Shown one piece after another: positions 14,902 to 47,923 of a DNA stretch of 64,000 bases. The notes beneath the pieces were generated by a model, which made no database searches, had not been told where the DNA came from, and saw nothing but the letters and a program-made list of their open reading frames with translations. Location: positions 186,001-250,000 of IMG/VR virus record IMGVR_UViG_3300017971_000185; one strand, given 5' to 3'. The translations under genes were made by a program, and so were the position numbers. Every line of letters begins with the position of its first letter. Position 1 is the stretch's first letter.

Positions 14902-17900
14902 ATGTCCACGACCGACAAGATCCGTCCCGGTGTAGATGCGAACATAGTCGAGGCCAACGTTGTTCGCGGGCACGATGCGATCCTGACTGGAAACGTACCC
15001 GAGGACATTCAGATAGCTGCGTCTCGTAACGACGGTGATGATGTTGTCGGGATCGTCACCATCTGGAATCGTACTGACTCCACCACGGAACAGGTGTTTG
15101 ATCTTCGGTCGGGGCTCACCTTTGGTACGGCCGAACGTGCCCAGATGTTCGTGGGAGCGATCGATCCCACGGGGACTCTGACGGCCACGGCAGGCAGCCT
15201 GTACCTCTCCACGACGCCCGCCAAGCTCTACCAGAACCAAGACGGGGCGACTGATTGGAAGGTCATCTCGGACGATCTAGGCGGCGAGACGCTGGAGGAG
15301 ACGCTCGTTCTGGGCAACACCACGGGCGACAACGCCATCATCGTCAGCGATCAGCCTTCCGCTGGCATCCAGGGTGAGGACAAGTCTGGCGGTACAGGCG
15401 GAGGCGATCTCAAGCTGCGGGGTGGTAGCGAATCTGGGCTCGCTGGCAACGGTGGCGATGTTCAAGTTTCGACGGGAACGACGGCGGCCGGTAACAGCGG
15501 ATCGATCATAGGGACGACGGCAGTCGTCACGACAGGCGGCGCGAGTGGTTTGATCGAGTGGGTAACCGGTGCTGTAACGGGCGGCGGCAACTCTGGAAGC
15601 AACACGCTCAAATCGGGCGATGTGGATACAGGAGCGTCGGGAGCGATCACGGTTGGTAGTGGCGATTCCTCTGGGTCGAATGGAGTAAGCGGCGATCTGA
15701 CGTTTGAAGCGGGTCGTACTCAGTCGGACGGGCAAGGTGGCGGGATCTACGTTTATGGCGGCTCTACGACTCCTCCGCCTGTGCCTCCGATTCCAACCTT
15801 CACGGCCGGAAGGGGTGGGCCGGTCATCATCGAGGCTGGTGAGTCCTCGGGGACGGTAGACGGACCACAAGTCAGCATTGTTGGAGGCGCGGGAGGATCG
15901 GGCGGAGGAGATGGCGGCAACGTGATTTTGTCCGGTGGTCCTGGCGGCGGCGGCGGTTCTGAGGGAGAGATCATTGGGCTGTCCAATCTCAGGGCCGACA
16001 ACATCAAGCGCGGCACCGCGGTTCCCAACGGCGTTGAGAACGGCAACGAAGGAGATATCTATCAGCGCACGGCCGGAGGCTTCGGTGAGCTTTACCTGAA
16101 CACGAATGGGACGAACAACGGATGGATCAAACTTGGAGCATCAGGGGACTTCTTTAACTCGCTGGTCAAGACTCAATGGGGATCGGTCCATGCCTCGATG
16201 GCAACCAATTTCATCAACGCGGACGGTTTCTTTGATGTCGCTACGTTTAGCTCGGCCGGAGCCGTAGTAGATCGAGAGACTGATGAAGGCGGCCCGAATC
16301 TGAGATGGGTCGTTGGCAATGGAGATGATGCGGGTATTCACATTATTGCTGGAGGGGGCGCGGGGGCTCTCCAGAGACAACAGAAATTCATCATCGGGTT
16401 CAAGTTTAGCGTCGATAGTCTCGATGCGGGATACATCAGTTTTCTGGGTGTTTCTAGTGCAGATTTGCCCACGATGCTCACGAACAGTCCTCTCGGGGAT
16501 TGGATTGGGCTTCAGAAGATCGACGGGGTGCCTTCGACTTTCCGCTTCGCTACGCGCGGAAACGTGGGGGAGTATATTGCTGATCCGCTCGTCACCTTCG
16601 CTCTGGATGAGGTTCACTACTTCATCATCGATACGACGGTTTCGGATGCGATCACATTCTTGCTGCTCGATAGCGCCTTGAATCTGGTCCGAACCGCAAC
16701 AATCAGTCCGGTAAGTGACAACACTTCGCCGTCTCTTACCGATGTCCTACGTCCAGTCTGCGGCATCAAAGGAACGAACGCGGTTCTCAAGACATTCGAT
16801 TTCTATCACTTCACGGCAGTCGTCCAGGGCGACCTGAATCTCGGTGGCGGCGGCGGTGGCGGAAGCATTCCGACGTTGGAGACAGTTCTCGGGTCAGGAG
16901 ATTTTACTGGCTCTAACTACATTCGTTTGACGGACTGGGATGCCACGTGGGGCGGCATCATTCAGGGCGAGGCAGATCCTCCGCTCAACGTGCCCGATGG
17001 TGGCCGAGTCACCATCGCAGGAGGAGCGACGACAGATCTGCTCGGGACCGGCGGTGATCTCTATCTCTTCTCCGGGAACCCGGCCATTGCCTCTGCGAAC
17101 AAGTCGGGGGCGGCCAGTCTGAATTCCGGCAGCGTTCTCGATGCAACGAACACGGGCGGAACAGGCGATGTCATCGTTAGCTCTGGAATCACGACTGGTT
17201 CAGGGATAAGCGGCGATCTGTGGTTACTGACAGGAACCACGGTCACAGGCGCTACGGGTGATATTAAAATTCTGAGTGGCTTGTCTGGGGGAGGGAATAC
17301 TGGAAATGTCGAAATCTTGACTGGAAACGCCGCATTAGCGGCAGGAAACATTACCCTCACGGGGGGAAATAGCACCGCTGGTGCGGGTGGAGGCATTGCA
17401 TTTCAAGGTGGCGATGGGGGCGGTGCTGCTGGGAGCGGTGGCGACATTATCATGGCCACGGGATTGCCCGATCCTGGCTTCAATCTGAATGGTGGCAACA
17501 TTGGGTTGCTCTGTACACAAGGCGCAGGCGCGGGCGACGGCGGATCGCTTGCCTTTGCGGCTGGGTTGGGTGGTCCTGGCGGTGGTGATGGCGGATCTAT
17601 AGGACTCACAGCCGGACCAGGAACAGCCGGAGTTTCTGCTGGCGGCAACATTGTGCTCACCCCTGGCTCGGGTTTCGGCGGTGGCGCTGATGGTGCGGTG
17701 ATCGTCAACGGCAAGCTGACAGTCACGGGGTTGATCGATCCGACCGGCATGGTCTTGGTCAACCAAGCCACGATTCCTGGCGGGACACCAGCGGCCGGAA
17801 GCAGCACGCTCTGGGTTCGCTTGTCAGACAATTCGCTGATGCTGACGGACTCCGGGGGGAGCGATCACCCCGTCAGTGGTTCTGCGATCGAGACCAAGGA

Positions 17901-20827: not shown

Positions 20828-23800
20828 ATGGCCCAGACTCCATTTCGCCAGCCCGGCAAAGACCTTGAGGTAACGGATGGGAACGTCATCACTGGCGCCG
20901 ATGACTCCCAGGGTGGGGACCTTACTCTTGAAGGCGGGACATCCTCTAGCGGGAACAACGACGCGGGCGATGTCGTCATCCGGCCCGGCCTTCCAAATGG
21001 CTCGGGTGCTCGCGGCATCGTCAATGTCACGAACAATGGGGGTGCTGATACAGATCCAATTCTTCAACTGACTTCCGAGACGGGAGCAAATGTTGAGGAT
21101 AGTCGCTTTTTCGTAGGGACACGAGATCCCCACACAAACGTAACTGGCAACCCTGGTGATGTCTACATCACACACAACGGCACCAGTAGTACGGTCAGCG
21201 TAAACACCGGGGCCGGGGACGCTAACACGACTTGGACAGATCTGGCGGGTGGAGGGACTGGCGGAGCAGATCCGGGCATAGAGGGGGTTCTTTGGGAAGA
21301 CATCCAGTTTTACCTCGACGCTGGGGACCGTAACTCATATCCCGGTTCCGGCTCGACCATAACGGATCTGATCGCTAGCAAGAGTTGCACGCTGTATTTC
21401 GTGACTATCACGGATAGTCACATCAACTTCAACGGCGTAAGCTCCTACCTCGACACCGGCACCCTGTCCGCTGCGCTCGTGAACCTCTTCGAAACGGGCG
21501 GGACGGTCGCCGCGTGGGTTCGTGCGGAATCAGATGGGGGAGGGAACGCGGGGCGTGTGGTGTCAACGACCGGTTCCGCAGACACGAAGGGCTGGTACTT
21601 GGATGTTAACGATGAGTCGTCCGGGCTTGTTCGTTTCAGATTTGAGCAGAACAGAGGCACGACAGACACGGTCTACACGACGTTCAGGACGGTCCCGATC
21701 AACGAGTGGGCTCATGTCGTCATCACCTACGACGGCAGCGACCCCGCGACGAAATTTCCGATCGCCTACATCAACGGTGAGCTAGTTTCCTGGGATTCAG
21801 AGACGGCGGGCTCTGGTGCCATTACGAGTGACTCAGGCGAGATCCTCTTCATCGGAAATCGGTGGGGCGCCGCTAGGACGTGGGACGGCGACATCGATCT
21901 GTTCCAACTTTGGGACCGTGTTTTGTCCGCCGATGAAGTCCGTCAGCTTTATCGAGTAACCGGCGAGGACCGATTCCGGCCTAGTTTGCTCGGAGACGCT
22001 GCTTCGACTTCTACTGGCGACGCTCCTGATGTCGAAATCAAGGCAGGCCCAGGAGGAAGTACGAGCGGTGCTGGAGGAGGCATCGCGCTGACGGCAGGAA
22101 CCACGACCGCCGGCTCGGGGGGAGGCATCACGATCACGGCCCAAGACGGCACGAGCGGAGCCGGAGACGTGATCCTCAATTCGGGGACGACTTCCTCTAG
22201 CGGTGATGGAGGAATCATCTCGTTACGTCCGGGCGTTGGCGCGGGGACAAACGACGGTTATGTCGACATTGATCCCGACTGGACCGGGGATGCGGATCCT
22301 CTCCTCCAATTCACGGTCACGGGTTCTAACGTTGACAACAACACTCAGATATTCACCGGGAACCGAAACCCCGATGGCTTCGTCACGGGAGAGTGTGGTT
22401 CCCTATACCTTCGCGGCAACACCGGGTCGAGCACGCTTTACGTCAATACGAGTGGGGCAAGCCCTGGGAGCACGTGGACGGAAATCGGTGCAGGGGGCTC
22501 TGGAGCGAGCGCGGGCATCGAAGGCGTTATCTGGGGCAACAACCAATTCTACCTCGATGCCGGCGACCGCAACAGTTACGCCGGATCGGGTAACACGTGG
22601 ACGGACATCGTTGGTTCTCGCGCCGCAACGATGACCAACCAGACCATCACTGATGGTCACATCATCTGGAACGCCAGTACGACCACGGCAACGTTCACTT
22701 CCGACTCCTCCATAGAAGACATTTGGAATGGGGGCGGTACGCTCATTGCTTGGGTTCGGGCAGATAGTTTTGGTGAAAGTAGCGTCGGTCGCATCGCGAG
22801 CACGGCGAACGCAGGTAACACCATAGGATGGTACGCAGGTGTTACGTCCGCTAGCGGCAACACCTGGAAGCTCTACTTCCGTCAGAATTTCGACAACACG
22901 GATGGCGAATGGCGCACGACCTCGACGGTAAACCTCAATGAGTGGTTGTTCTTTGCCATCACCTACGACTCTAGCTCTGCCAGTAACGAACCTACGCTCT
23001 ACATCAACACGGTTCTGGACACGACCGACGAGATAACCAACCCGATTGGCGATTACGGTTCTGAATCGGGAGCGGACTTGGACATTGGTCGTGCTGGAGA
23101 CGGCTCAGGAACGTGGGGTGGCGCGATCGAAATTGTCATGCTCTATGACACGGAGTTGTCTGACGATGCGATCCGTCAGATCTACAGTGTCACGGGGCAA
23201 GATCGTTTGCGGCCGAGTTTGATGGGCGCTCCCACGACGGACGCTAGTCGACCACCACAACCCATTCAAATTATTGCGGCTGATGGTGGGGCTACAGCCA
23301 GTGACGGAGGCGCGGTCGAAATCTCGTCCGGGGCTAGCACGACTGGTGCGGGGGGTGCTGTTTCGGTCACGGGTGGCGCGTCGGAAGGCGGCACCACGGG
23401 AGGAGACATATCGATCACAGGTGGAGACGTTGCAAGCACTAACTACAGTGCAGGTGATGTCACCATTAAGGGCGGCGATCTGGACTATTCGTCCGCGATT
23501 TCCCCAAACACGGGCGGAGACGTCACCCTCGAAAGTGGTTCGTATAGCGGGACAGGTTCGGCGCAGCCAGGCGGAATCACCATCAAGACGGGGACGGGAG
23601 GAACCAACAGCGCAGCCGCTCCCGATCTTCTTCTTCAAGTTACATCCTATGCTGGAAGCAGTGCCCTTGGAGACATCATCCTTCAAGGAGGAGACAACAC
23701 CGGGACAGGCGCAGCAGGGGGAATTCAGATTCTTGCCGGAGACGCTAGTGGTGATCCGGGTGGGGGTGTCACAATCACGGCGGGCGATGGGACCGGGGTA

Positions 23801-25345
23801 GGCGCGGTTGGGGGAGCCCTTAATCTGACTTCAGGCGGCGCGAGTGCGAGTTATACGGGCACGATCAACATTGATGTTCCGGCACAGTCTGCATCAGGCA
23901 GAGGCACGGGTGACATCAACATAACCATTGGAGACACTGCCTCCAATTACGGCTCGAATCCTTCGGGCGACATCAGTCTCACGGCAGGCGATCATACGGG
24001 CACGACGGGAACCGCTCAGGCTTCCAGCATCTTTCTCACAGCCGGGGATCATGCGGGAAATGAGAACAATGCGCCACCGGGCGATATCACCCTGAGCGCA
24101 GGAGATCAAACCGGAAGTGGTCGGGGTGCTGCTGGCGGCATCTACATTTGGGCTGGAGACAAGACAGGCGGCAGCCACAGTACTACGGCGGGTGGTCAGG
24201 TAGACATCGATGCTGGCGAGGGCAGTGGGGTAGGCCCAGGAGGGGCCGTCAGCATCACTGGCGGTTTAGCTGGCTCAACTGGAACCGGCGGCGGAGTTGA
24301 CATTGATGCAGGAGGATCTGGTACGGGAGCGACAGGTACGGGGGGAACGGTTGCCATCGATGGTGGGACCTGTAATGCGACGAATGGCGCAGGAGGCCCC
24401 GTCACCATCACGTCCGGTGCCGGTGCGGGGACGGGGAATGCTGGAGCCCTTGCGCTTAGCGGCAATGACGGAGGAGCCACGTCGGGTACAGGTGGAGATG
24501 CATCTCTGGGCGGCGGTGAAGGCGGCGGCACGGGTAGGGGAGGCAACCTTTCTCTTTTCTCGGGAACGGGTGGTGCGAACGGTGCGGGCGGGACGGTGTC
24601 GATCAACGCCGGGAGTGGCGGAGCTTCCGCGGGAGCATCGGGGACGATCACGATTTCCGGTGGCGATGGAGGCTCGGCGACAGTTGCAGGGGGAGCCGTT
24701 ACCTTTGAAGGAGGGGCTGGTAACACGACCGGAGCAGGGGGTCTTGCAACGGTTCAAGGAGGCACAGCAGGAGCTTCGGGGAATGGCGGCAGCGTAGCGA
24801 TTACGGCGCAAGATGGTGCTACGAATGGGGACGGTGGCAGTGTCACTGCGACCGCTGGTGGGGGTGCTGGGACCGGTGCCGATGGGAATGTCTCTGCCTT
24901 CGCGGACGACGACGGGTCCTTCCAGCATCGCACGCAGACGACGGGGTTCGCTGGAACGCAGTGCGACCACAAGACACTCGCGCTTCAAGCCTCTACGTCT
25001 GGCACGACTGTGTTAGCCGTGCTCGGGGTTCTGAGCACGGACGGCTTGAACATGAAATTCGACGTAAAATGTACGGGTGTCCGCGACTCCAACGACTCCG
25101 ATATCATCTCGATTTTCGCTGTGCAGACGGCGTATCGGGTTGGCGGTACGGTGTTTCTCTTGACGGCTCATGTCGATCCGACTTCGGCTCCCGGCAAGCA
25201 GACGAATGGTACGATTCCCTGGACGAACATCCAACTGGCCATCAACGGAGACAACATTGAGCTTCAAGCCACGGCCACGGCTGCCACGGGCGACTGGAAT
25301 TTCTCGATAGAGTGGACGCGACAGCTTGGCGGCTACTCCTCGTAA
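20828..25345 (+). CDS. Fibre-like virion protein with two LamG/concanavalin-A-like domains (1505 aa)
   Basis: Two copies of QFYLDAGDRNSYxGSGxTxTD...GGT..AWVRA..NEW.....TYD..LYING..WxGxI.....DR/TxLSxDxxRQxY (about 21300-21960 and 22540-23200), Gly-rich repeats and two knob motifs. Confidence 0.82.
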   Translation: MAQTPFRQPGKDLEVTDGNVITGADDSQGGDLTLEGGTSSSGNNDAGDVVIRPGLPNGSGARGIVNVTNNGGADTDPILQLTSETGANVEDSRFFVGTRDPHTNVTGNPGDVYITHNGTSSTVSVNTGAGDANTTWTDLAGGGTGGADPGIEGVLWEDIQFYLDAGDRNSYPGSGSTITDLIASKSCTLYFVTITDSHINFNGVSSYLDTGTLSAALVNLFETGGTVAAWVRAESDGGGNAGRVVSTTGSADTKGWYLDVNDESSGLVRFRFEQNRGTTDTVYTTFRTVPINEWAHVVITYDGSDPATKFPIAYINGELVSWDSETAGSGAITSDSGEILFIGNRWGAARTWDGDIDLFQLWDRVLSADEVRQLYRVTGEDRFRPSLLGDAASTSTGDAPDVEIKAGPGGSTSGAGGGIALTAGTTTAGSGGGITITAQDGTSGAGDVILNSGTTSSSGDGGIISLRPGVGAGTNDGYVDIDPDWTGDADPLLQFTVTGSNVDNNTQIFTGNRNPDGFVTGECGSLYLRGNTGSSTLYVNTSGASPGSTWTEIGAGGSGASAGIEGVIWGNNQFYLDAGDRNSYAGSGNTWTDIVGSRAATMTNQTITDGHIIWNASTTTATFTSDSSIEDIWNGGGTLIAWVRADSFGESSVGRIASTANAGNTIGWYAGVTSASGNTWKLYFRQNFDNTDGEWRTTSTVNLNEWLFFAITYDSSSASNEPTLYINTVLDTTDEITNPIGDYGSESGADLDIGRAGDGSGTWGGAIEIVMLYDTELSDDAIRQIYSVTGQDRLRPSLMGAPTTDASRPPQPIQIIAADGGATASDGGAVEISSGASTTGAGGAVSVTGGASEGGTTGGDISITGGDVASTNYSAGDVTIKGGDLDYSSAISPNTGGDVTLESGSYSGTGSAQPGGITIKTGTGGTNSAAAPDLLLQVTSYAGSSALGDIILQGGDNTGTGAAGGIQILAGDASGDPGGGVTITAGDGTGVGAVGGALNLTSGGASASYTGTINIDVPAQSASGRGTGDINITIGDTASNYGSNPSGDISLTAGDHTGTTGTAQASSIFLTAGDHAGNENNAPPGDITLSAGDQTGSGRGAAGGIYIWAGDKTGGSHSTTAGGQVDIDAGEGSGVGPGGAVSITGGLAGSTGTGGGVDIDAGGSGTGATGTGGTVAIDGGTCNATNGAGGPVTITSGAGAGTGNAGALALSGNDGGATSGTGGDASLGGGEGGGTGRGGNLSLFSGTGGANGAGGTVSINAGSGGASAGASGTITISGGDGGSATVAGGAVTFEGGAGNTTGAGGLATVQGGTAGASGNGGSVAITAQDGATNGDGGSVTATAGGGAGTGADGNVSAFADDDGSFQHRTQTTGFAGTQCDHKTLALQASTSGTTVLAVLGVLSTDGLNMKFDVKCTGVRDSNDSDIISIFAVQTAYRVGGTVFLLTAHVDPTSAPGKQTNGTIPWTNIQLAINGDNIELQATATAATGDWNFSIEWTRQLGGYSS

Positions 25346-38002: not shown

Positions 38003-38136
38003 GCGCGAGCGCACAACGAGTTGCTTCCCGATACCTGCAAGATGCTCGTGTGGATCACTACGAGGTCGAGAAGTGGCTTGAGGAGGCTGGGGTGAAACCG
38101 GAAATCGCTGCTCCGTCCAAGACGGACGGCCAATGA
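37999..38136 (+). CDS. 45-aa protein beginning with tag MSASAQRVASRYL
   Basis: Read by eye. ATGA overlaps at both ends. Confidence 0.65.
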   Translation: MSASAQRVASRYLQDARVDHYEVEKWLEEAGVKPEIAAPSKTDGQ

Positions 38137-38384
38137 CGCTGATGGAGCAGGGAAAGAGGGCATCCATGAAGCGAACAGCAATCGTTAAGAAGCATCCCGA
38201 ACGCGGGGTTTGGTGCCTATTCGATTCTGAGGGTAAGAAGGCGCTCAACTGTTTCAAGAATCGGTACAAGGACAAGAAGCCGCCTCAAGAGGCTATCGAG
38301 CGGGCAGAGCGCATCGTGCAATTCTACAAACACCAGGCTAAGGACATGGCGGTTCGGGTCGCAGCGAGATGGCGGGGCGAATGA
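38133..38384 (+). CDS. Small protein with phage head-associated-type motif and C-terminal RVAARW tag
   Basis: IVKK....WCLF...GKK..CF......AxERxVQFYKH resembles a short motif seen in phage head-morphogenesis genes (recalled). Confidence 0.6.
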   Translation: MTLMEQGKRASMKRTAIVKKHPERGVWCLFDSEGKKALNCFKNRYKDKKPPQEAIERAERIVQFYKHQAKDMAVRVAARWRGE

Positions 38385-38810
38385 CGGCGTCAGCACAGCG
38401 CGTGGCACATGCTCATCTTCTCCGCACGGGAGCCAAGGCTCTCAGCGGTAACGCGATTCGGTTGGAAGCAAGACATCAAGAAGGAGGCTGACCAGATCAC
38501 GAGAGAGATTCGCGATGGGTTTGTCAGGAAGAACACGATGAAGCTGAGTGCCATCGTGACCGGGAAAGGCAACCTGAAGAACATCGAAGTCCTGAGTTGG
38601 GCACGTAGCAACTTTGAAGGCGATATGCTGTTCACGTTCAAGGACGGATCGAGTTTCGAGGTACGCAACAAGACCGTGACCAAGATGTCGGTCAAGGGCC
38701 GGTGGTTCTCGCAGTACCCGACGACGTTCCACAAGGTAGTCATGCCGGACGGCAAGAAGATGCCTTCTCCGTCTGAGAAGCGCATGGTCCAGGTATTCGC
38801 GGCAGTGTGA
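38381..38810 (+). pseudogene. Frame-disrupted gene: tag-bearing start in one frame, conserved body in +1 frame
   Basis: ATG 38381 (ATGA overlap) gives MTASAQRVAHAHLLRTGAK, stop at 38491. The +1 frame (38409-38810) carries IRDGFVRKN..KGNLK..FEGD..F.F.DGS.F.V.N..FSQYPTTFH.VV.PDG. Confidence 0.55.
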
Positions 38811-41593
38811 TGGGTCGGCCGAAGTACATCGGGATCTTTCTCACGCCTCAGAGTAGGCGGGCGCTCCTGCGCACCTATCCGCCCGTCCATCCCACTGTCT
38901 ACGCCGATCACGTCACGGTGATCTACGATCCCACCGATGCCGACTTGGAGAAGGTCGAATTGGGAGAGATCGTCACGGTCAAGCCGGTAGCTCATCTGGA
39001 GGACGAAAAGGCCCAGGTGTTGAGGGTGAGCATTCCGTCCTACCTGGCTCGGCTCACCAACCGGGTGCCGCACATCACAATCTCTACGGCTCGCGGTGTT
39101 GCTCCCGTGTATGCGGGCGAGCTAGCCAAGTCGCACCACACCATGATCGCCCCGAAGCCAGGCAACTACACGGGCATCGTGGACGTGGACAAGCGTAGCC
39201 ATCCGGTGCGAACGAGGATGTTCCCGCTGGCCGCTGCTCCCAAGCACTACAAGATCGATCAGGGCGACGTTCGCAAGAAGACGCGCCGTGACAAGAAGCA
39301 GGAGCTAGAGGAGGCGAAAGACCTTGGTTTCTATTCGTACACGGTGATGAAGGTCGTTCCCATCAAGCAGGTCAAGACTCCGCCGGTCTGGAACCAAGGG
39401 CGTATCGACAGGATCAAGAAGGGGCTCGCGTCTGGGAAAGCCTTTCCGCCCATCTCTCTTGCGGGGAAGCGTCCTCCCTATGAGATCAGTGACGGCATCC
39501 ATCGGACCAACGCGAGTATCGACGCTGGCTACACGCACATCCCAGCGTACTTCACGGTGCTCGTAGAGCGCCCCGATCTCTACGAAGAGCCCGAGAAGGA
39601 GAAGCCCAAGCTACGGCCAGGTACTTGGGTCAAGATGCGCGCGTCTCGGGACGGTTTCGATTGGGCGGTTGTGATCGAGTACGTGGGTCCTCGCGTGTGG
39701 AAGGGAGTCAAGCGTCACTTGTACGGTCTCGTAGCGGGCGATACGAACAAGTCCGACTTCATCGGAGACTGGATGGACTCCGAGTTTGATCCCGTGCGGG
39801 AAGGACAAGTACCGAGGAAGGTGCGTGAGACGATTCTGGCAGACCCGTTTGCTGATCATCTTCCGCAGCGACGTGTTGCTGCTCGCCATCTCATCGCTCG
39901 TGACTATTTCGAGATAGGCGACATCATCTTGTACGGGAAGTACAAGAACAAAAAAGCACGGATTGTGGCGTGGGGCAAGGACCACAAGGGAAACCCCACT
40001 GTCGAGATTGAGCCCATCCCCAAGGGCCGCAAGAAGAACAAGACCCTCGGCCTGTTCCGCATCTGGCACGCGCTCCCGCCAGAGGAGCGGAAGAAGGAAG
40101 CGCAGGTTCGGACGGCGGAATTTTCTCCCAATTGGGATTGGCCCAACGTCCTGAAGAATGTGGCCATCTTCAACCAAATCCACAAGACGGTGAAGGGATG
40201 GACGCGCCTGAGCGACAAGGACCGAGTACCGGCGCTCCAGAAAGAAAAGCCGTTCATCGGACAACTGAAGAAGGATGTCGCGGGCGGAACCTTCCCTGGT
40301 CAATGGGAAGCAGGTTTGGCTGAGTGGCTCTATCAGTGGTGGGGATTCGAGTGCCCCAAGAAAGGCACTTCTGATCTGCTTCATCATGAGCTTTCGGTTC
40401 TGTATCGTCATGTTGCCATCGAGCCCAACAACTATTTACTCAAGAAGGATGTCGAAAATACAGCACGAGTGTTAGACACGTACTCCAAGGAGGTCAACGA
40501 CTGTCTCAAGCAAGCCGGGCCAGCGCGTCTGACCTACTCGGGGTTCAAGGTCTGGAATCCGCAGCGCATGCCCGACAAGATGATGCGCAAGCTGTTGAGC
40601 GGCGTCGATCACATCATGGCGATCTTCCGCAAACGAGGGATGGAGAAGGCGCTCACGAAAGGCGTCAAGGACATCCTCGTTCGCAAGTGGACTAGCAACG
40701 ATGGAAAGTATGTTGCCTGGTACTTCTCCCGTGAGCGCCGCATCGTCCTGACCGATGCTGTTCTCAAACCCGGCGGTGGTCGGCTCATGGATCGCTGGAT
40801 CTCCGAAGTGTTCCTCCATGAGTTTGGGCATCATGTCCACATGACGTACCTCCATCCCAACGCTAAGAAGGAATGGGATGCCGGGTGGAGTCCTGTTGAG
40901 TCGGCACGGGAGAAGGTCGAGCAAGAATTCAAGATCACCGGGAAGGACCGAAGGCGGTTCTTCGATCTCATCGAACGGAATGATTGGAGTCCGTCGAAAG
41001 CGGCACGAAAGCTCAAGGGCTTGGACAAGCTACGGTTCATGGCGTGGCTGCGCAACCCTGGTTTGGGAGAGCCCTTGATTACACCTAAGATTGTTCGGTT
41101 GACGCGTCGAGGGAAGGACGTGTTTGATTTCTTGCGGGACCCAGAGGGGCATTGGCGTCAACAACACCCTGGAGACCTGCTCAGTCATCTCCAATATGAG
41201 TCGAAGGAGCAGCAGAGAGCGGAAGAGGATGCTTATGTGGCAAAGCAAGTAGCTCAGAAGCTCCGCCGCCTTCGCAACGATGTTTTGTCTCTCGATTGGG
41301 AAGGCGCAGACAAGATTCCCCGAGCGTTGCAAGACGAGATTCGCAAAGAGGACAAGAGCGTAGACGCTGCGATAGATGCTTTGGAAGTCCCCACGGATTA
41401 TGCGAGAACGAATGAGATGGAGGACTTTGCCGAGTCTTTTGTTGCCTTCGTGGCGAACCCGGCAAAGCTCTCGGACCAGGCCAAGTTCCGCATGCAGCGT
41501 GCTCTCAGCCTCTCCGGGCTCTACGGCAAGCCGATTATGAGGCTGGCTGAGCGGGTCGCTCAGACCTGGCGTCGAAGGCAGGCCGCAGCCTAG
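38807..41593 (+). CDS. Multidomain (polyvalent-type) protein: 2H phosphoesterase + ParB/Srx-like + SH3-like + HExxH zincin metallopeptidase
   Basis: HVT (ADHVTV) and HIT (VPHITI) 2H pair; PPISL..YEISDGIHR; VFLHEFGHHVH plus DYARTNEMEDFAESF. Tags RRVAARHL (internal) and ERVAQTW (C-terminal). Confidence 0.78.
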   Translation: MMGRPKYIGIFLTPQSRRALLRTYPPVHPTVYADHVTVIYDPTDADLEKVELGEIVTVKPVAHLEDEKAQVLRVSIPSYLARLTNRVPHITISTARGVAPVYAGELAKSHHTMIAPKPGNYTGIVDVDKRSHPVRTRMFPLAAAPKHYKIDQGDVRKKTRRDKKQELEEAKDLGFYSYTVMKVVPIKQVKTPPVWNQGRIDRIKKGLASGKAFPPISLAGKRPPYEISDGIHRTNASIDAGYTHIPAYFTVLVERPDLYEEPEKEKPKLRPGTWVKMRASRDGFDWAVVIEYVGPRVWKGVKRHLYGLVAGDTNKSDFIGDWMDSEFDPVREGQVPRKVRETILADPFADHLPQRRVAARHLIARDYFEIGDIILYGKYKNKKARIVAWGKDHKGNPTVEIEPIPKGRKKNKTLGLFRIWHALPPEERKKEAQVRTAEFSPNWDWPNVLKNVAIFNQIHKTVKGWTRLSDKDRVPALQKEKPFIGQLKKDVAGGTFPGQWEAGLAEWLYQWWGFECPKKGTSDLLHHELSVLYRHVAIEPNNYLLKKDVENTARVLDTYSKEVNDCLKQAGPARLTYSGFKVWNPQRMPDKMMRKLLSGVDHIMAIFRKRGMEKALTKGVKDILVRKWTSNDGKYVAWYFSRERRIVLTDAVLKPGGGRLMDRWISEVFLHEFGHHVHMTYLHPNAKKEWDAGWSPVESAREKVEQEFKITGKDRRRFFDLIERNDWSPSKAARKLKGLDKLRFMAWLRNPGLGEPLITPKIVRLTRRGKDVFDFLRDPEGHWRQQHPGDLLSHLQYESKEQQRAEEDAYVAKQVAQKLRRLRNDVLSLDWEGADKIPRALQDEIRKEDKSVDAAIDALEVPTDYARTNEMEDFAESFVAFVANPAKLSDQAKFRMQRALSLSGLYGKPIMRLAERVAQTWRRRQAAA

Positions 41594-41774: not shown

Positions 41775-42914
41775 ATGAAGGTTCTCAAGCTACAGATCTT
41801 CCATGGCAACGAGATGAAGGAATGGCGCACGATCGAGGACGACGTGACCAAGATCGGGACGCTCCAGTCCTCGCACATCCAGCTTGAAGGGCTAGCGCGC
41901 ATGCACGCGGTGATCGAGCGCAGCACGGACACGTTCCGGCTCATCGATCTCGGCGGCGTGCCTCCGACTTTCGTCAATGGCGAGCAGATCAGGCAGGCCG
42001 AGATTCAGAATGGCGACATGATCCACTTCGGTCGAGAGGGTCCGTGGAGTATGCGCGCGACCATCGAGACAGCCGTCGAGGTTGACGTGGACCGCAAGCC
42101 GGAGGCCCCTGACTCTTTGTCACGGGATGAGCTTTTCGAGACTTTCGCCAACGCAGCCCAACGACGCAAGGAGCGAGAGGACAAGGAGGATATTCCAGAC
42201 GATGAGCTTTTTGATCATTACTATCGCAAGTACCAACGTCGTAAGGCTCAGGAGCAAGAGCGCGAGAAGGACTCGGGGCAAGAGAAGTTGTTTGAGAGCC
42301 TGTGCGAACAGATGGAGGAGCTTGTAGAGGAGCGCTCAGAAGACCAGAAGAATGACATTACACGGATGCTTACCCAGGTGAAGTCTCTGTGGAAGAGCAA
42401 GGATCCTGAAAGAAAGCAAGATCAGATCCGACGCCTTGAGGATATTATTCAGGCTCTCAAGCAAGACAGGCAAGAGAAGGAGCAGATGGCGCACGCTTTG
42501 ATCGATGCCACGAGCCAAATCATTGCGGAAGGCACGATGGAAGAGGCGTTCAAGATCTCCGAAGAAGAGGCGCTTGAGAAAGCCGCCGATCTCGTCATGG
42601 AGGTCAGTCAGTACAAGGATGCCCTCGGTCTCCTTCAGGTGTTTTCTGGGCCAAAAGAAGGCGGAGCAGGGGACAAGAAAGTCTTTCTCAAGGGGAAACA
42701 TCTCTTGGAGAAACAATTGTCGGGGGAGGTCGCTAGAAAGAGTCTGTTCTTGAGTCTCTACATCGCGCGGGCAGGCGGCTGGACGTGGGAGCAACAACAA
42801 AAGGAAATGCTGAAAGCGCGGCGTAACCTGACTGAGGAGGAGCTTCAAGTGCTTGAAAACCATCCCGCAGTCAAGAAGGTTTTTGAAGCCATGGAGAGGC
42901 AGAGCGGTAGCTAG
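41775..42914 (+). CDS. FHA-domain protein with acidic coiled-coil C-terminus
   Basis: TKIGTL.SSHIQL..LARMHAVI...LIDLG....TFVNG.....I.NGD.I.FG. Confidence 0.78.
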   Translation: MKVLKLQIFHGNEMKEWRTIEDDVTKIGTLQSSHIQLEGLARMHAVIERSTDTFRLIDLGGVPPTFVNGEQIRQAEIQNGDMIHFGREGPWSMRATIETAVEVDVDRKPEAPDSLSRDELFETFANAAQRRKEREDKEDIPDDELFDHYYRKYQRRKAQEQEREKDSGQEKLFESLCEQMEELVEERSEDQKNDITRMLTQVKSLWKSKDPERKQDQIRRLEDIIQALKQDRQEKEQMAHALIDATSQIIAEGTMEEAFKISEEEALEKAADLVMEVSQYKDALGLLQVFSGPKEGGAGDKKVFLKGKHLLEKQLSGEVARKSLFLSLYIARAGGWTWEQQQKEMLKARRNLTEEELQVLENHPAVKKVFEAMERQSGS

Positions 42915-42938
42915 TCGATAAACCACGGTTTACAGGAG

Positions 42939-43613
42939 ATGCTGAAGCCGCAGGACATCGTGCATGTAGGAGGGACGCTGACCGCCGCTAGCGTGTTGGC
43001 TGCCTACCACCAAGGAGTGTTTCCTTGGTTCTCGCACGATGGCAGCGACGTGCTTTGGTGGTCGCCAGATCCTCGATTCGTGCTCGACGTGAACGAGGTA
43101 CACAGAGGGCGCACCGTTCGGAAAGCGCTCAAGAAGCTCGACTTCACGATCGACGCTGAGTTTGACCAAGTGATACAGGAGTGTGCCGACAAGCGCTATG
43201 CAGCCAGGTCTGCGATGGGAACCGATCGGACCGACACTTGGATCACTCCCCGGATGTTGAAGGTGTACCGGAAGCTCTATCGAGAAGGCTACGCGCACAG
43301 CGTCGAGGCGTGGAAGGATGGCGATCTAGTAGGTGGTCTTTACGGTCTGTGCCTGGGCAACGTGTTCTTTGGCGAGTCCATGTTTGCGCACATGCCCAAT
43401 GCGTCCAAGGCGGCTCTTGTGTTCCTTTGCGATAAGCTGAAGGAAGCGGGTGTCGGAAGGATCGATTGTCAGATGGAGACTCCGCTGATGCGCTACATGG
43501 GAGCCAAATTTGTCAGTCGGGCGCAGTTTCGAGATGGTCTCTTGTTGGGCTTGCTCACCAAGCCCACGCTCCGAGGAAAGTGGTCTGTAGATGGGTTGCC
43601 AGACGCAGAGTGA
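42939..43613 (+). CDS. aat: Leucyl/phenylalanyl-tRNA--protein transferase
   Basis: LAAYHQGVFPW, WWSPDPR, F.QVI..CA, TWIT, AHSVEAW...LVGGLYG...G.VFFGESMF...NASKAAL, IDCQM.T. Lacks the usual short N-terminal extension. Confidence 0.95.
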   Translation: MLKPQDIVHVGGTLTAASVLAAYHQGVFPWFSHDGSDVLWWSPDPRFVLDVNEVHRGRTVRKALKKLDFTIDAEFDQVIQECADKRYAARSAMGTDRTDTWITPRMLKVYRKLYREGYAHSVEAWKDGDLVGGLYGLCLGNVFFGESMFAHMPNASKAALVFLCDKLKEAGVGRIDCQMETPLMRYMGAKFVSRAQFRDGLLLGLLTKPTLRGKWSVDGLPDAE

Positions 43614-43956
43614 CGTAGTTTCCCTGCCCAACCCGCCGCCAGACGGCTCGACCGTGGAGGAGATCTTGACTTACCTGGACACGATCAGGGTCATCGATCC
43701 GGTGCCGCACGCCGTGGTCACGTTGAACGGCTACACCTTCAGGCTCGACTGGCCTCGCATTCCGATGCTGCCGCCTACGATGTGGTACATCACGTCAACG
43801 AGCCCAGCCACAGCGAGGGATACACAGATAGCTCGTCCCCGTCTCGGATGGCAGTGGTGTTGGGAATATGCAATCGACACGATCAAAGCCGAGATTGAGC
43901 GGGTATTAACCGCTATACCAACCCCAGACCCAGGCCCATGGCCACCACCCCTATGA
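43591..43956 (+). CDS. Hypothetical protein
   Basis: Pro-rich 121-aa frame; start uncertain. Confidence 0.45.
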   Translation: MGCQTQSDVVSLPNPPPDGSTVEEILTYLDTIRVIDPVPHAVVTLNGYTFRLDWPRIPMLPPTMWYITSTSPATARDTQIARPRLGWQWCWEYAIDTIKAEIERVLTAIPTPDPGPWPPPL

Positions 43957-44387
43957 TCAACCTGACCCCAAAGGCTCTCTGCAAGCGAATTTTCCAAGGT
44001 AGTGAAGGCATCCAAGCCGCTGCTATAGCACGGTGCAGCGAAAGCGGTTGGGATGGGAGGCTCTGGCTGGCTGACGGGAAATCCGAGCATACCCCGCCTC
44101 CCTTTTCTACTCCTTGGGAAGATACCTTTTCGAAGCTCTTGCTCTTGCTGGGGACGCTTTCCGTCGACAAGTTTCATGTCAACACAGAGGCCCGTCGCAT
44201 AGCCGATCCCGCGCATAGTCTTGTAGTCGAGAAGCAAGACGAGTGGGTCGTGCTTGTGGCCGTGGCTTTGGGACACCCAATCCGTAAGAGCTTGCGCCGA
44301 ATGATTGCCAAGACGTTCCGCGATCTTCGGAAGGATGGACCGCCGCAGAAGGTGATTCCCTTCACGCCAGTCGCCGTTGAGGAGTAG
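43953..44387 (+). CDS. Hypothetical protein
   Basis: ATGA overlap at 43953. Confidence 0.55.
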   Translation: MINLTPKALCKRIFQGSEGIQAAAIARCSESGWDGRLWLADGKSEHTPPPFSTPWEDTFSKLLLLLGTLSVDKFHVNTEARRIADPAHSLVVEKQDEWVVLVAVALGHPIRKSLRRMIAKTFRDLRKDGPPQKVIPFTPVAVEE

Positions 44388-44674: not shown

Positions 44675-44959
44675 ATGCCGATCAAGAAGAAAACAAAGAC
44701 GACCAAAGCTAGACCGACCAAGGCCGCATCGACAAACGTCGAGGAAGCCATCTCTGTGAAGAACGGAATCAAGGCCACAGTCTACAAGGACAAGGCTGGC
44801 GAGTTTCGTTGGCGAGTTGTCAAGAAGGGTCGGGTTATCGGAGCGAGCAGCGAGGGCTACAAGCGTCGAGGGAGTGCTGTGTCCAACTTCACGAATCTCT
44901 GCGAAGCCATGCGACTCGTCAGGCCGAAACCGAAGAAAGCCGCGGCGAAGAGAGCATGA
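44675..44959 (+). CDS. YegP/DUF1508-like protein
   Basis: VYKDKAGEFRWRV....RVIGASSEGYKRR..A..N; AGGAGG RBS. Confidence 0.75.
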   Translation: MPIKKKTKTTKARPTKAASTNVEEAISVKNGIKATVYKDKAGEFRWRVVKKGRVIGASSEGYKRRGSAVSNFTNLCEAMRLVRPKPKKAAAKRA

Positions 44960-46533: not shown

Positions 46534-46977
46534 GTGCGCAAACCGCACAAAGGCACCTTACGAGCACTCGCCAAACGATTCCGGGCTTGGCTCGTCACGC
46601 TTCCTCAGATCGCCTCTTTCGATGAGGATCTCTGTGGGGCGTGTGCGATTGCTTCGGATGGTCTGGCTCGCTTTCTTCGTAAAGAAGGTTTCGACGCTTG
46701 GTTTGTCGAGGGCCAGTACGTTCCTTGCGCCAACAGCACTCGGTCAGAGGACTTTTACGGTGCCGAGACCAACCATTGTTGGGTCGAGGTTGGTCGGAAG
46801 TGGATCGTGGACATCACTGCTAGGCAGTACAGTGGGCGATTCCCCGAGGTCTACATTGTGCCCACAGAGCATGAGGACTATCATAGATTCCGGCGAGGGC
46901 CGTATGCTCTTCGATGCGTGCGGCGGGAGTGGCCGAAAGACCACCATCCACTCGGTCGAAAGCTACGCATCAGGTAG
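46534..46977 (+). CDS. Papain/transglutaminase-like Cys-His-Asp protein
   Basis: LCGACAIAS ... NHCWVEV ... IVDITARQY. Start set at GTG 46534 after GAGGGA. Confidence 0.62.
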   Translation: MRKPHKGTLRALAKRFRAWLVTLPQIASFDEDLCGACAIASDGLARFLRKEGFDAWFVEGQYVPCANSTRSEDFYGAETNHCWVEVGRKWIVDITARQYSGRFPEVYIVPTEHEDYHRFRRGPYALRCVRREWPKDHHPLGRKLRIR

Positions 46978-46981
46978 GAGT

Positions 46982-47923
46982 ATGACTGAGATTTACATGA
47001 TGGCTGGCGTGCCGGGTTCGGGCAAGAGCACGGAAGTCAAGAAGTTGCCGCCGCACGTTTACCTGAGCCGGGACAAGGAAGGCGGCAAGGTTTTGAGCTT
47101 GCTTCCGAAAATGCATAAGGCGATTGCGGACGGGGCCGAGATCATCGTGCTCGACTGTACTTTCCTTTTGCCTGAGCACCGTGAGCCCTTTCTTCAAGCC
47201 GCGGAAAAGGCTCAGGTGCCGGTTCATCTCAAGTTTCTCGATGTCAGTAAGGAACAGGCTCAATTCAACTTGTGCTGGCGCATGTGCGAGCGCTACGGGC
47301 ACGTGCTGCGGTCCGAAGAGATGGACGAGTACAAGCACGATCCAAACATGTTCCCGCCGACTGTTCTGTTCGGATGGTTCAAGAAAATGGTGCGGCCTCA
47401 GTATGCTGAGGGTTTCGATTCGGTCGAGGTCATCAAGATCGGGCGCTGGCCTTTGCCTTCTGAATTCAAGAACAAGGCGTTCATCGTGGATTACGACGGG
47501 ACGGTACGGGAGACCAAGAGCGGAGAGATCTACCCGACTGATCCCTCCGACGTGCGAGCACTCCCACAGGCGGCTGAGAAACTCCAGAAGATAGCCAAGG
47601 AAGGAAGGCTGTTGCTTGGAGCGAGCAATCAGTCTGGTGTCGCCAAGGGTCTTCTGACCATGGAGACGGCCAGGGCATGTTTCGAGGAGGCCAATCGCCA
47701 GCTTGGCGTAGACATCGAGTATGCCTTCGACTACAGTCGGTCTGGGCCGATCACTTCCTGGCACCGAAAGCCCATGCCGGGAATCGGGGTAGACTTCATC
47801 TGGAAGCATCGGCTGGACCCGAGCCAGTGTGTTTTTGTGGGCGACATGACTTCGGACGAGACCTTCGCCCAGCGATGCGGTTTCCAGTTTGAGTGGGCAA
47901 AGGATTTCTTCGGACATGAATGA
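46982..47923 (+). CDS. Bifunctional polynucleotide 5'-kinase / 3'-phosphatase (P-loop kinase + HAD IIIA)
   Basis: MAGVPGSGKST (Walker A), VLDCT, and HAD motifs VDYDGT, SNQSGV, RKPMPG, FVGD..SD..FA. Confidence 0.88.
   Translation: MTEIYMMAGVPGSGKSTEVKKLPPHVYLSRDKEGGKVLSLLPKMHKAIADGAEIIVLDCTFLLPEHREPFLQAAEKAQVPVHLKFLDVSKEQAQFNLCWRMCERYGHVLRSEEMDEYKHDPNMFPPTVLFGWFKKMVRPQYAEGFDSVEVIKIGRWPLPSEFKNKAFIVDYDGTVRETKSGEIYPTDPSDVRALPQAAEKLQKIAKEGRLLLGASNQSGVAKGLLTMETARACFEEANRQLGVDIEYAFDYSRSGPITSWHRKPMPGIGVDFIWKHRLDPSQCVFVGDMTSDETFAQRCGFQFEWAKDFFGHE

What the first reader, a model, noticed from the sequence alone, without database searches (positions are those of the whole stretch)
42939..43613. Phage-encoded N-degron enzyme Aat (L/F-transferase)
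Seen: a compact aat with its own AGGAG RBS. Established: Aat adds Leu/Phe to N-terminal Lys/Arg, marking proteins for ClpS-ClpAP. Inference: the phage can redirect host proteolysis. Speculative link: several RVA tags are followed by Ala-[Arg/Lys] (LA-R, RA-K, DA-R, GA-K, IA-R) or Ala-Phe, so cleavage after that Ala would expose exactly N-degron residues and give injected cargo a timer. A/R/K richness may explain this by chance.
Basis: partly seen in the sequence, partly recalled or inferred. Interest (0 to 1): 0.6.

Follow-up and report, generated by a model that had tools for sequence, protein, structure and literature searches.

The report
Huge-phage copy of Aat transferase
A roughly 500-kb phage from sediment and seawater carries an intact, long-kept copy of the bacterial enzyme Aat, which marks proteins for destruction, so the phage probably pushes proteins into the host's Clp protease, but the proposed "timer" built on RVA tags has no direct support.

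Summary
The ORF at 42939..43613 (+, 224 aa) is a genuine leucyl/phenylalanyl-tRNA--protein transferase. It scores Pfam PF03588 E 1e-62 and passes the TIGR00667 equivalog cut-off. Its AlphaFold model matches E. coli Aat at TM 0.81. The catalytic Asp/Gln, the acceptor Glu and the Leu/Phe pocket are kept.

The window lies in a 497-kb virus record. The gene has the phage's own composition, is under purifying selection, and recurs in two sublineages of related huge phages, always near one FHA-domain gene. No bacterial Aat is closer than 51%, so the capture is old.

A 618-kb relative also encodes a canonical ClpS, which supports an N-degron role. This phage has no ClpS, ClpA, ClpP, Bpt, LeuRS or PheRS, but it does carry four tRNA-Leu and one tRNA-Phe.

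The AGGAG abuts the ATG with spacer 0, which is atypical here. The RVA motif is real (about 32 sites). Ala-Arg after it is enriched genome-wide, but it looks like part of the motif: fewer than half the tags have it, five tags are C-terminal, and nothing shows cleavage.

Verdict: a new member of a known kind in an unusual setting. The N-degron inference is plausible; the timer idea is unsupported.

The parts
42939..43613 (+). aat: leucyl/phenylalanyl-tRNA--protein transferase, 224 aa
   Evidence: PF03588 E 1.3e-62. TIGR00667 162.8 bits, above the 143.55 cut-off. E. coli Aat structures E 5e-42. Fold TM 0.81. dN/dS about 0.15 against the 62% relative in L003. GC3 0.684 against 0.690 +/- 0.05 for the genome.
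43464..43472 (+). Codons for D176-C177-Q178, equivalent to E. coli D186-C187-Q188 (catalytic Asp/Gln)
   Evidence: Alignment to 2z3k. D and C are invariant and Q nearly invariant in alignment A2. The role of these residues comes from my memory of the E. coli structural work and was not re-read here.
43374..43376 (+). Codon for E146, equivalent to E. coli E156 (recalled as the residue that reads the basic N-terminal side chain of the acceptor)
   Evidence: Kept in the window and in P0001, P0002, P0004 and P0005. It is Ser in P0003, Cys in sublineage B and Val in L002.
42934..42938 (+). AGGAG directly abutting the aat ATG (spacer 0)
   Evidence: Sequence. The genome-wide spacer distribution peaks at 5-8 nt, and aat is the only gene with spacer 0.
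41775..42914 (+). FHA-domain protein, 379 aa from ATG 41775 (the ORF opens at TTG 41745): N-terminal FHA plus a conserved helical C-terminal domain. It is the immediate upstream neighbour of aat.
   Evidence: PF00498 E 4e-11. It is the only FHA gene in the genome. Orthologues lie within 0-3 kb of Aat in both phage sublineages. The start is set by the alignments.
43591..43956 (+). orf121: a conserved 121-aa protein with Pro-rich ends, whose start overlaps the end of aat by 23 nt
   Evidence: Seven relatives at 60-83% identity, all in sublineage A. dN/dS about 0.19. No Pfam hit. Model pLDDT 66 with no PDB fold match. Not ClpS-like.
43938..44387 (+). orf149: next gene of the same-strand run, function unknown
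   Evidence: Weak relative at the same position in L003, 26% identity, E 3e-9. No Pfam hit.
44675..44959 (+). DUF1508 protein, 94 aa: a further conserved member of the Aat neighbourhood
   Evidence: PF07411 E 7e-5. A DUF1508 gene lies between Aat and FHA in sublineage B contigs and downstream of Aat in L003.

Best explanation
The gene encodes a catalytically competent L/F-transferase that a lineage of huge phages captured from bacteria long ago and has kept.

Proposed mechanism. During infection the gene is expressed from a same-strand run: FHA protein, aat, orf121, orf149. Aat takes Leu or Phe from Leu-tRNA or Phe-tRNA. The phage supplies four tRNA-Leu and one tRNA-Phe; host synthetases must charge them. 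Aat adds that residue to proteins whose N-terminus is Arg or Lys, which are normally fragments made by endoproteolysis. The new Leu/Phe N-terminus is read by ClpS and the protein is degraded by ClpAP. In this phage both must come from the host. A 618-kb relative brings its own ClpS. The net effect is more flux through the host's N-degron route in infected cells, either to clear cleaved host proteins or to limit the life of some phage proteins.

Shown: family membership, fold, kept active-site residues, purifying selection, conservation in a phage clade, and ClpS in a relative.

Inferred: enzyme activity, dependence on host ClpS-ClpAP, and the purpose. The substrates are unknown.
For: Identity and fold. 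The residues equivalent to E. coli W49, W111, M144, E156, M158, L170, F173, I185, D186 and Q188 are W30, W101, L134, E146, M148, L160, L163, I175, D176 and Q178.

Viral setting: a 497,194-bp virus record, 94% complete, with one aat copy. Identical DNA occurs in sediment and seawater metagenomes from 11 studies.

Not a recent pick-up. GC is 57.2% and GC3 0.684, like the phage's own genes. The best bacterial Aat is only 50-51% identical. In both trees the phage rows sit on long stems outside the bacterial groups.

Kept by selection. dN 0.33 against dS 2.17 versus L003. A natural variant shows 3 synonymous changes to 1 replacement. The gene is present in sublineage A (P0001-P0005, L003-L005) and in sublineage B (L089 in a 618,736-bp record, L090, L094-L096).

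N-degron theme. The 618-kb relative has a canonical 110-aa ClpS, PF02617 E 6e-30, with the NDD..T..H motif. ClpS is recurrent in cultured jumbo phages (PMC7824862). The phage carries tRNA-Leu x4 and tRNA-Phe. The Aat to ClpS to ClpAP route is described in PMC4765774.
Against: No activity or expression data exist, and no RNA run holds the stretch. This phage's record has no ClpS, ClpP, Clp-type AAA_2, Bpt, LeuRS-type or PheRS gene. Everything downstream of Aat must therefore come from a host that is not identified and may or may not have ClpS/ClpA.

The phage enzyme lacks about 20 N-terminal residues of bacterial Aat and has a 7-residue insert modelled at low confidence. The effect of either change is unknown. 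The acceptor Glu varies in relatives (Ser, Cys, Val), so the clade may not be uniform in specificity. The ribosome-binding signal is oddly placed. No source of Arg/Lys N-termini was identified.
Confidence: 0.6

Rival explanations
1. A protease cuts after the Ala that follows RVA tags on injected cargo proteins and exposes Arg/Lys/Phe. Aat then adds Leu/Phe, so the cargo is degraded after a set time.
For: The RVA-type motif is real. RVA with an aromatic residue at +5 occurs 19 times against 6.7 expected, p 2e-5. A matrix scan finds 32 sites in 26 proteins. A-[RKF], mostly Ala-Arg, is enriched 6-12 residues after the tag: 10 of 19 against 2.2 or 4.2, p<0.001. Tagged proteins include giant multi-domain enzymes of the kind proposed elsewhere to be injected (PMC7824862). 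A 928-aa tagged protein with an HEFGH motif lies two genes upstream of aat.
Against: Only 14 of 32 tags have the dipeptide. Its position slides between +7 and +10, which fits a loose helical motif better than a cleavage site. Five tags are at the extreme C-terminus; the one with the dipeptide would leave a 3-residue stub. No maturation protease family was found (S77, S78 and ClpP all negative). Nothing shows that the tagged proteins are packaged, injected or cut. Inside the window the enrichment is not significant. No RVA-type tag was seen in the few short loci of relatives scanned.
Confidence: 0.04
2. The phage enzyme has shifted specificity. It might use another N-terminal residue (E. coli Aat can also modify an N-terminal Met of PATase, from memory) or a non-protein acceptor, as FemX and MprF relatives do. 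Its role would then not be the classical Arg/Lys N-degron step.
For: The clade differs from bacterial Aat by an N-terminal truncation of about 20 residues and a 7-residue insert. The acceptor Glu is replaced in P0003 (Ser), sublineage B (Cys) and L002 (Val). The fold is shared with FemX, MprF and ATE1 at low TM, 0.4-0.5.
Against: In the window's own protein every recalled acceptor and donor residue is kept, including E146. It passes the equivalog cut-off that NCBI uses to name Aat. The match to E. coli Aat is far closer than to any other transferase: TM 0.81 against at most 0.49.
Confidence: 0.12
3. Aat works with the neighbouring FHA-domain protein, which would act as an adaptor that brings chosen (perhaps phosphorylated) proteins to Aat or to the protease.
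For: Each of the two huge genomes has a single FHA gene, and it lies beside Aat or within about 3 kb of it in both sublineages. This holds even though Aat is only 42% and the FHA protein only 26% identical between them, and the gene order differs. In the P0001 contig Aat is 91% identical while the FHA neighbour is 45%, the pattern expected for a fast-evolving target-binding partner.
Against: The shared neighbourhood also holds DUF1508 and may simply be inherited gene order. The phage has no Ser/Thr kinase. The family has Ala where canonical FHA domains have the phosphate-binding Ser (my reading of alignment A3), and it also hits the phospho-independent YscD-type model. The complex prediction gave no answer, which counts neither way.
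Confidence: 0.1
4. The gene is a passenger: a chance capture of host DNA, an assembly chimera, or a decaying copy with no role for the phage.
For: Aat is rare in viral collections: four loci in 2.9 million IMG/VR contigs by pattern scan. Some database 'phage' hits are really bacterial DNA; the 'Acinetobacter phage MD-2021a' contigs carry ftsK, trxB, aat, bpt, rimI and tufA.
Against: The same gene sits in the same phage-specific neighbourhood on independent contigs from many samples. Its composition is that of the phage. dN/dS is about 0.15. The frame is intact with all key residues. No bacterial Aat exceeds 51% identity.
Confidence: 0.04

Closest known systems
E. coli Aat (leucyl/phenylalanyl-tRNA--protein transferase; PDB 2CXA, 2DPS/2DPT, 2Z3K-2Z3P)
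   Same: Same family and fold: PF03588, TIGR00667, 36-38% identity, TM 0.81, rmsd 1.6 A. The Asp-Cys-Gln catalytic motif, the acceptor Glu and the hydrophobic donor pocket are the same.
   Different: It is encoded by a 497-kb phage rather than a bacterium. It lacks the first 20 or so residues and has a 7-residue insert after the Cys82 region. It sits between an FHA gene and an unknown 121-aa gene rather than near infA/clpSA as in E. coli (gene order from memory).
ClpS genes of jumbo phages (e.g. PA5oct, Atu_ph07, GAP32, Phosso, SCTP-2), noted in Iyer et al. 2021, PMC7824862
   Same: This is another case of a large phage carrying one component of the bacterial N-degron route, presumably to steer the host ClpAP. 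The 618-kb relative of this phage has such a ClpS as well as Aat.
   Different: None of the 34 ClpS-holding GenBank phage records is among the Aat holders. This phage has Aat without ClpS.
Aat-like genes annotated in Xanthomonas/Erwinia jumbo phages (PhiXhv-12/15/16, Ep026, Ep032)
   Same: Phage-borne, about 228-kb genomes, annotated as leucyl/phenylalanyl-tRNA--protein transferase.
   Different: Only 30% identical over 75% of the query. The protein is 277 aa, on a very long branch. By my eye on the printed sequence, Asp-Met-Glu stands where Asp-Cys-Gln should be and there is no WWSPDPR motif. It is probably a separate capture and possibly not a canonical Aat.
Bpt / ATE1 (leucyl- or arginyl-tRNA--protein transferases acting on Asp/Glu N-termini)
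   Same: Same superfamily fold and the same logic of tRNA-dependent N-terminal tagging (ATE1 at TM 0.44).
   Different: No ATE_C-type gene is present in the phage. The window protein is far closer to Aat than to ATE1.

Membership tests
Aat (L/F-transferase; PF03588 / TIGR00667) | Scores above the curated family cut-offs over the full domain | tested here: met
   PF03588: 210.7 bits against 22.7, profile positions 3-170 of 171. TIGR00667 equivalog: 162.8 bits against 143.55.
Aat (L/F-transferase; PF03588 / TIGR00667) | Two-lobed GNAT-like fold of E. coli Aat | tested here: met
   AF2 pLDDT 88, pTM 0.87. The top nine PDB matches are all E. coli Aat, TM 0.81-0.82. The first 20 or so residues of the bacterial enzyme are absent.
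Aat (L/F-transferase; PF03588 / TIGR00667) | Catalytic Asp186 and Gln188 (E. coli numbering; roles recalled from the 2006-2007 structural papers) | tested here: met
   D176 and Q178 lie in an 'IDCQ' motif.
Aat (L/F-transferase; PF03588 / TIGR00667) | Hydrophobic pocket for the Leu/Phe side chain (M144, M158, L170, F173, I185) and Trp49/Trp111 | tested here: met
   The equivalents are L134, M148, L160, L163 and I175, plus W30 and W101. Two changes are conservative.
Aat (L/F-transferase; PF03588 / TIGR00667) | Acidic residue that reads the basic acceptor N-terminus (E156) | tested here: met
   E146 is present in the window protein. It is not kept in P0003, sublineage B or L002.
Aat (L/F-transferase; PF03588 / TIGR00667) | Transfers Leu/Phe from aminoacyl-tRNA to Arg/Lys N-termini | not testable with these tools
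   Needs an enzyme assay.
Complete bacterial Leu/N-degron pathway (Aat + ClpS + ClpA + ClpP) | ClpS adaptor present in the same genome | tested here: not met
   No PF02617 match at E<=0.1 in the 497-kb record. tblastn with the relative's ClpS gave nothing better than E 0.19. The record is 94% complete, and longer assemblies of 527,654 bp exist, so absence is not proven. The 618-kb relative does have ClpS.
Complete bacterial Leu/N-degron pathway (Aat + ClpS + ClpA + ClpP) | ClpA-type unfoldase and ClpP peptidase present in the same genome | tested here: not met
   There is no PF07724 and no PF00574 match in this phage or in the 618-kb relative. These must be host-supplied.
   19 sites against 6.7 expected, p 2e-5. 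There are 32 sites in 26 proteins: 12 N-terminal, 15 internal, 5 C-terminal.
   Genome-wide: 10 of 19 against 2.2 at random positions or 4.2 after local shuffling, p<0.001. In the window alone it is not significant. Only 14 of 32 tags carry it.
   No S77, S78 or ClpP protease was found. The only lead is an HEFGH motif in the 928-aa tagged protein. N-terminal proteomics is needed.

The most novel reading that the evidence does not exclude
A lineage of huge phages runs its own targeted N-degron system. The fast-evolving FHA-domain protein kept next to Aat selects particular host (or phage) proteins or fragments. Aat writes the degron. ClpS, phage-encoded in the 618-kb relative and host-encoded here, hands them to ClpAP. 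This would give the phage programmable removal of chosen proteins. The RVA-tagged multi-domain proteins could be one substrate class.
Probability: 0.1. Interest if true: 0.7.

Novelty: new member of a known kind. Interest (0 to 1): 0.4.

Why it matters
Phages are known to bring ClpS or ClpP, but the writer enzyme of the bacterial N-degron route has not, in the papers I could search, been discussed as a phage gene. Here it is an old, conserved gene of a clade of 500-620-kb phages, and one member has both writer (Aat) and reader (ClpS). That makes a concrete, testable case that large phages reprogramme which proteins the host Clp machine destroys. It also supplies a naturally shortened Aat for enzymology. 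It does not change what Aat is understood to do.

Tried and rejected
1. Complex prediction of Aat with the FHA protein (alignments A2 and A3) returned 'no answer', score 0.00. It is not evidence for or against binding.

2. I tested whether the translationally overlapped orf121 is a hidden ClpS. It has no Pfam hit and no usable Atlas lead. Its model has pLDDT 66 and no PDB fold match at E<=0.001. The idea is rejected as unsupported.

3. 'Acinetobacter phage MD-2021a' looked like the closest phage Aat, but its contig is bacterial chromosome with ftsK, trxB, aat, bpt, rimI and tufA. Discarded.

4. Donor and host inference from the Aat tree failed. The best bacterial hits are Spirochaetaceae, Saprospiraceae, Syntrophales and Gammaproteobacteria MAGs at 43-51%. 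The phage rows do not nest in any of them, and their placement moved between the two quick trees. No donor or host is claimed. The careful tree search did not finish in the time allowed.

6. Expression: no RNA run holds the stretch, and only contigs could be laid.

7. I did not try to reach the roughly 30 kb by which other assemblies exceed this record (527,654 against 497,194 bp).

8. Literature searches for phage Aat found nothing relevant.

The big representative-protein search was not used.

Full report
**What is there.** The window is bases 186,001-250,000 of a 497,194-bp IMG/VR virus record that CheckV rates 94% complete. GC is 57.7% and most genes lie on the + strand. An ORF of 224 codons runs from ATG 42939 to TGA 43613 on the + strand.
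- It matches Pfam PF03588 (Leu_Phe_trans) end to end at E 1.3e-62.
- It passes the NCBIfam equivalog model TIGR00667 'aat', 162.8 bits against a cut-off of 143.55.
- It aligns to the E. coli Aat crystal-structure sequences at E 5e-42.
- An AlphaFold2 model built on 16 sequences has pLDDT 88 and pTM 0.87.
- Its nine best PDB matches are all E. coli Aat chains, with TM 0.81-0.82 and rmsd 1.6 A over 208 columns. The next folds (ATE1, Eis, FemX, MprF) stay at or below TM 0.49.

The gene identification is therefore confirmed.

**Active site.** I numbered the 2z3k chain from the alignment, taking chain index plus one as the E. coli residue number. The residues I recall as functional from the 2006-2007 E. 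coli structures map as follows. Their roles are from memory and were not re-read here.

| E. coli | Window protein |
|---|---|
| W49 | W30 |
| W111 | W101 |
| M144 | L134 |
| E156 | E146 |
| M158 | M148 |
| L170 | L160 |
| F173 | L163 |
| I185 | I175 |
| D186 | D176 |
| Q188 | Q178 |

All are kept or conservatively replaced. Two features set the phage clade apart from bacterial Aat. It starts about 20 residues later, and all five close relatives begin 'ML' at the same column, which also fixes the start codon. It also has a 7-residue insert, modelled with low confidence.

**The 'own RBS'.** AGGAG lies at 42934-42938 and touches the ATG. Across 288 confident genes of this genome, AGGAG/GGAGG 5-mers cluster 5-8 nt before the start, and aat is the only gene with spacer 0. 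The 62% relative has GAGG in the same abutting position. Sublineage B has GGAG 15 nt upstream. The upstream FHA gene stops 24 nt before the ATG. I would not call this a normal Shine-Dalgarno site.

**It is a phage gene, and an old one.**
- The gene's GC (57.2%) and GC3 (0.684) match the phage's own genes, 0.690 +/- 0.05.
- Identical DNA across the 2.7-kb stretch stands in contigs from sediment and seawater metagenomes of 11 studies.
- The word search found one 91% relative, three at 62% and one at 54%. After those come thousands of bacterial Aats at no more than 51%.
- Among one genome per species of 185,579 prokaryotes, the best hits are Spirochaetaceae MAGs at 50-51%, followed by Saprospiraceae, Syntrophales and Gammaproteobacteria.
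- In two quick maximum-likelihood trees the phage rows form their own groups on long stems and nest in no bacterial group. Their exact position moved between trees, so I name no donor.
- Against the 62% relative, dN is 0.33 and dS 2.17.
- A natural 96-98% variant shows three synonymous changes and one replacement, Q77R, which is also the P0001 state.

**A clade-wide gene with a conserved neighbourhood.** An alignment-based scan of 2.9 million IMG/VR contigs gave only four Aat loci. One lies in a 618,736-bp record that is 92% complete.

I distinguish two sublineages.
- Sublineage A holds the window, P0001-P0005 and contigs L003-L005. Its gene order is FHA protein, Aat, orf121, orf149, an 81-aa gene, DUF1508.
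- Sublineage B holds L089 (in the 618-kb record), L090 and L094-L096. Its gene order is a 180-aa gene, Aat, a 345-aa gene, three small genes including DUF1508, a 98-aa gene, then the FHA protein.

The FHA proteins of the two sublineages align over their full length at 26% identity, E 5e-18. Each huge genome has only this one FHA gene. Other genes around these loci also have homologues in the window's genome, so the two phages are related. The FHA-Aat pairing may be functional or simply inherited order. The complex prediction gave no answer.

The FHA family has Ala where canonical FHA domains have the phosphate-binding Ser (my reading). It also hits the phospho-independent YscD-type model. The phage has no Pkinase gene.

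**Other parts of the pathway.** This phage's record has none of the following:
- ClpS (tblastn with the relative's ClpS);
- ClpP;
- Bpt/ATE_C;
- a Clp-type AAA_2 unfoldase;
- a class-I LeuRS-type synthetase or PheRS alpha.

It does carry 46 tRNA genes, including four tRNA-Leu and one tRNA-Phe(GAA), about 100 kb from aat.

The 618-kb relative encodes a canonical 110-aa ClpS (PF02617, E 6e-30) with the Asn-Asp-Asp...Thr...His signature, but no ClpP or AAA_2. ClpS is also found in 34 GenBank phage records. Most are jumbo phages of about 285-490 kb, such as PA5oct, Atu_ph07, GAP32, Phosso and SCTP-2; a few are short or mislabelled records. Iyer and colleagues have noted it as a way to bring targets to the host ClpAP (PMC7824862). 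The dependence of Aat-made degrons on ClpS and ClpAP is described in PMC4765774.

Writer and reader together in a sister phage is the best contextual support for the canonical role. The absence of ClpS here is not proven, because the record is incomplete and other assemblies reach 527,654 bp.

**The RVA-tag idea.** The tripeptide RVA itself is barely enriched, 69 against 58 expected. RVA with an aromatic residue at +5 occurs 19 times against 6.7 expected, p 2e-5. An iterated weight-matrix scan, allowing about two false positives per proteome, gives 32 sites in 26 proteins. The consensus is roughly (S/A)-x-R-V-A-[A/R/S]-R-[Y/H/W]-L-[A/Q]-[R/A]. Twelve sites lie within the first 30 residues, five within the last 30, and fifteen are internal. 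Five sites lie in the window, at nt 2890, 38017, 38355, 39872 and 41552.

A-[RKF], mostly Ala-Arg, occurs 6-12 residues after the tag in 10 of 19 strict tags. That compares with 2.2 at random positions in the same proteins and 4.2 after shuffling the local residues, p<0.001 for both. In the window alone it is not significant.

However, several points argue against a cleavage site:
- the dipeptide slides between +7 and +10;
- only 14 of 32 tags have it;
- the one C-terminal tag with it would leave a 3-residue stub;
- no maturation-protease family was detected.

I read Ala-Arg as part of a basic, probably helical, docking or targeting motif. Cleavage, packaging and injection remain untested. It has no positive evidence beyond the enrichment.

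**Mechanism and verdict.** The most likely account is a working L/F-transferase that raises flux of Arg/Lys-ended proteins into the host ClpS-ClpAP route, with unknown substrates (confidence about 0.6). Within that figure I put about 0.85 on enzyme identity and activity and about 0.5 on the physiological reading.

| Rival explanation | Confidence |
|---|---|
| Shifted acceptor specificity | 0.12 |
| FHA-guided version (not exclusive of the main account) | 0.10 |
| Passenger gene | 0.04 |

Phage Aat-like genes are already annotated in a few Xanthomonas and Erwinia jumbo phages. Those are very divergent and appear to lack the Asp-Cys-Gln motif. I found no paper that discusses a phage Aat.

I rate this a new member of a known kind in an unusual and informative setting, with interest 0.4.

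No human-like, toxin, alternative-code or spliced-model issue arose.

Noticed in passing
window 2890-2925, 38017-38060, 38355-38381, 39872-39915, 41552-41590 (plus 27 more sites elsewhere in the 497-kb genome): A short basic motif, roughly RVA-x-R-[Y/H/W]-L-x-A-R, recurs 32 times in 26 proteins. It sits at extreme N-termini (12), at extreme C-termini (5), or just before enzyme domains inside giant proteins (15). It looks like a shared docking or targeting peptide. I know of no described equivalent.
   Followed up: partly
window 38807-41593 (+), 928 aa: A multi-domain protein two genes upstream of aat. It has two H-x-T/S motifs and a weak 2H/CPD phosphoesterase hit at the N-terminus (E 0.0013, below cut-off). 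It also has a 'DGIHR' ParB-like motif (by eye), an HEFGH zinc-peptidase-like motif, and two RVA-type tags (aa 356 and 916). It resembles the 'polyvalent proteins' proposed to be injected by phages (PMC7824862).
   Followed up: partly
G001:C1:214756-214992 (-) = L098:1480-1812 (-): The related 618,736-bp phage encodes a canonical ClpS, next to a Tpt1/KptA-like RNA 2'-phosphotransferase-like ORF (named by eye from the translation). It therefore carries both Aat and ClpS.
   Followed up: yes
genome 310-376 kb (outside the window): 46 tRNA genes covering nearly all amino acids, including four tRNA-Leu and one tRNA-Phe, but no LeuRS-type or PheRS gene.
   Followed up: partly
genome 450,981-467,778 (L100), outside the window: A run of giant tagged proteins. 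One of 1510 aa has a CCA-adding/tRNA nucleotidyltransferase domain at 1150-1301, right after a tag at 1116. One of 1523 aa has an N-terminal type IB topoisomerase core. One of 1371 aa is interrupted by Hint/intein and LAGLIDADG domains.
   Followed up: partly
window 6620-14251, 14902-19869, 20828-25345 (+): Three very long ORFs of 2543, 1655 and 1505 aa in a row, not analysed here.
   Followed up: no
window 46622-47923 (+): A polynucleotide kinase / 3'-phosphatase-like protein (AAA_33 plus PNK3P). Together with the 2H-like domain and a Tpt1 homologue at about 369 kb, it hints at an RNA-repair set.
   Followed up: no
window 41775-42914 (+) and relatives (alignment A3): The FHA family next to Aat has Ala in place of the conserved phosphate-binding Ser ('ARMHA' instead of 'SR.HA'). 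In the contig where Aat is 91% identical, the FHA protein is only 45% identical, so it evolves much faster than its neighbour.
   Followed up: partly
GenBank CAKLQH020000030.1 / CAKLQF020000028.1 (L087): Records labelled 'Acinetobacter phage MD-2021a' carry ftsK, trxB, aat, bpt, rimI and tufA. They look like bacterial chromosome, not phage.
   Followed up: yes
whole record: The window's FHA protein and orf121 are on record on contigs up to 527,654 bp, about 30 kb longer than the 497,194-bp record held here. Some genes of this phage could therefore not be examined.
   Followed up: no
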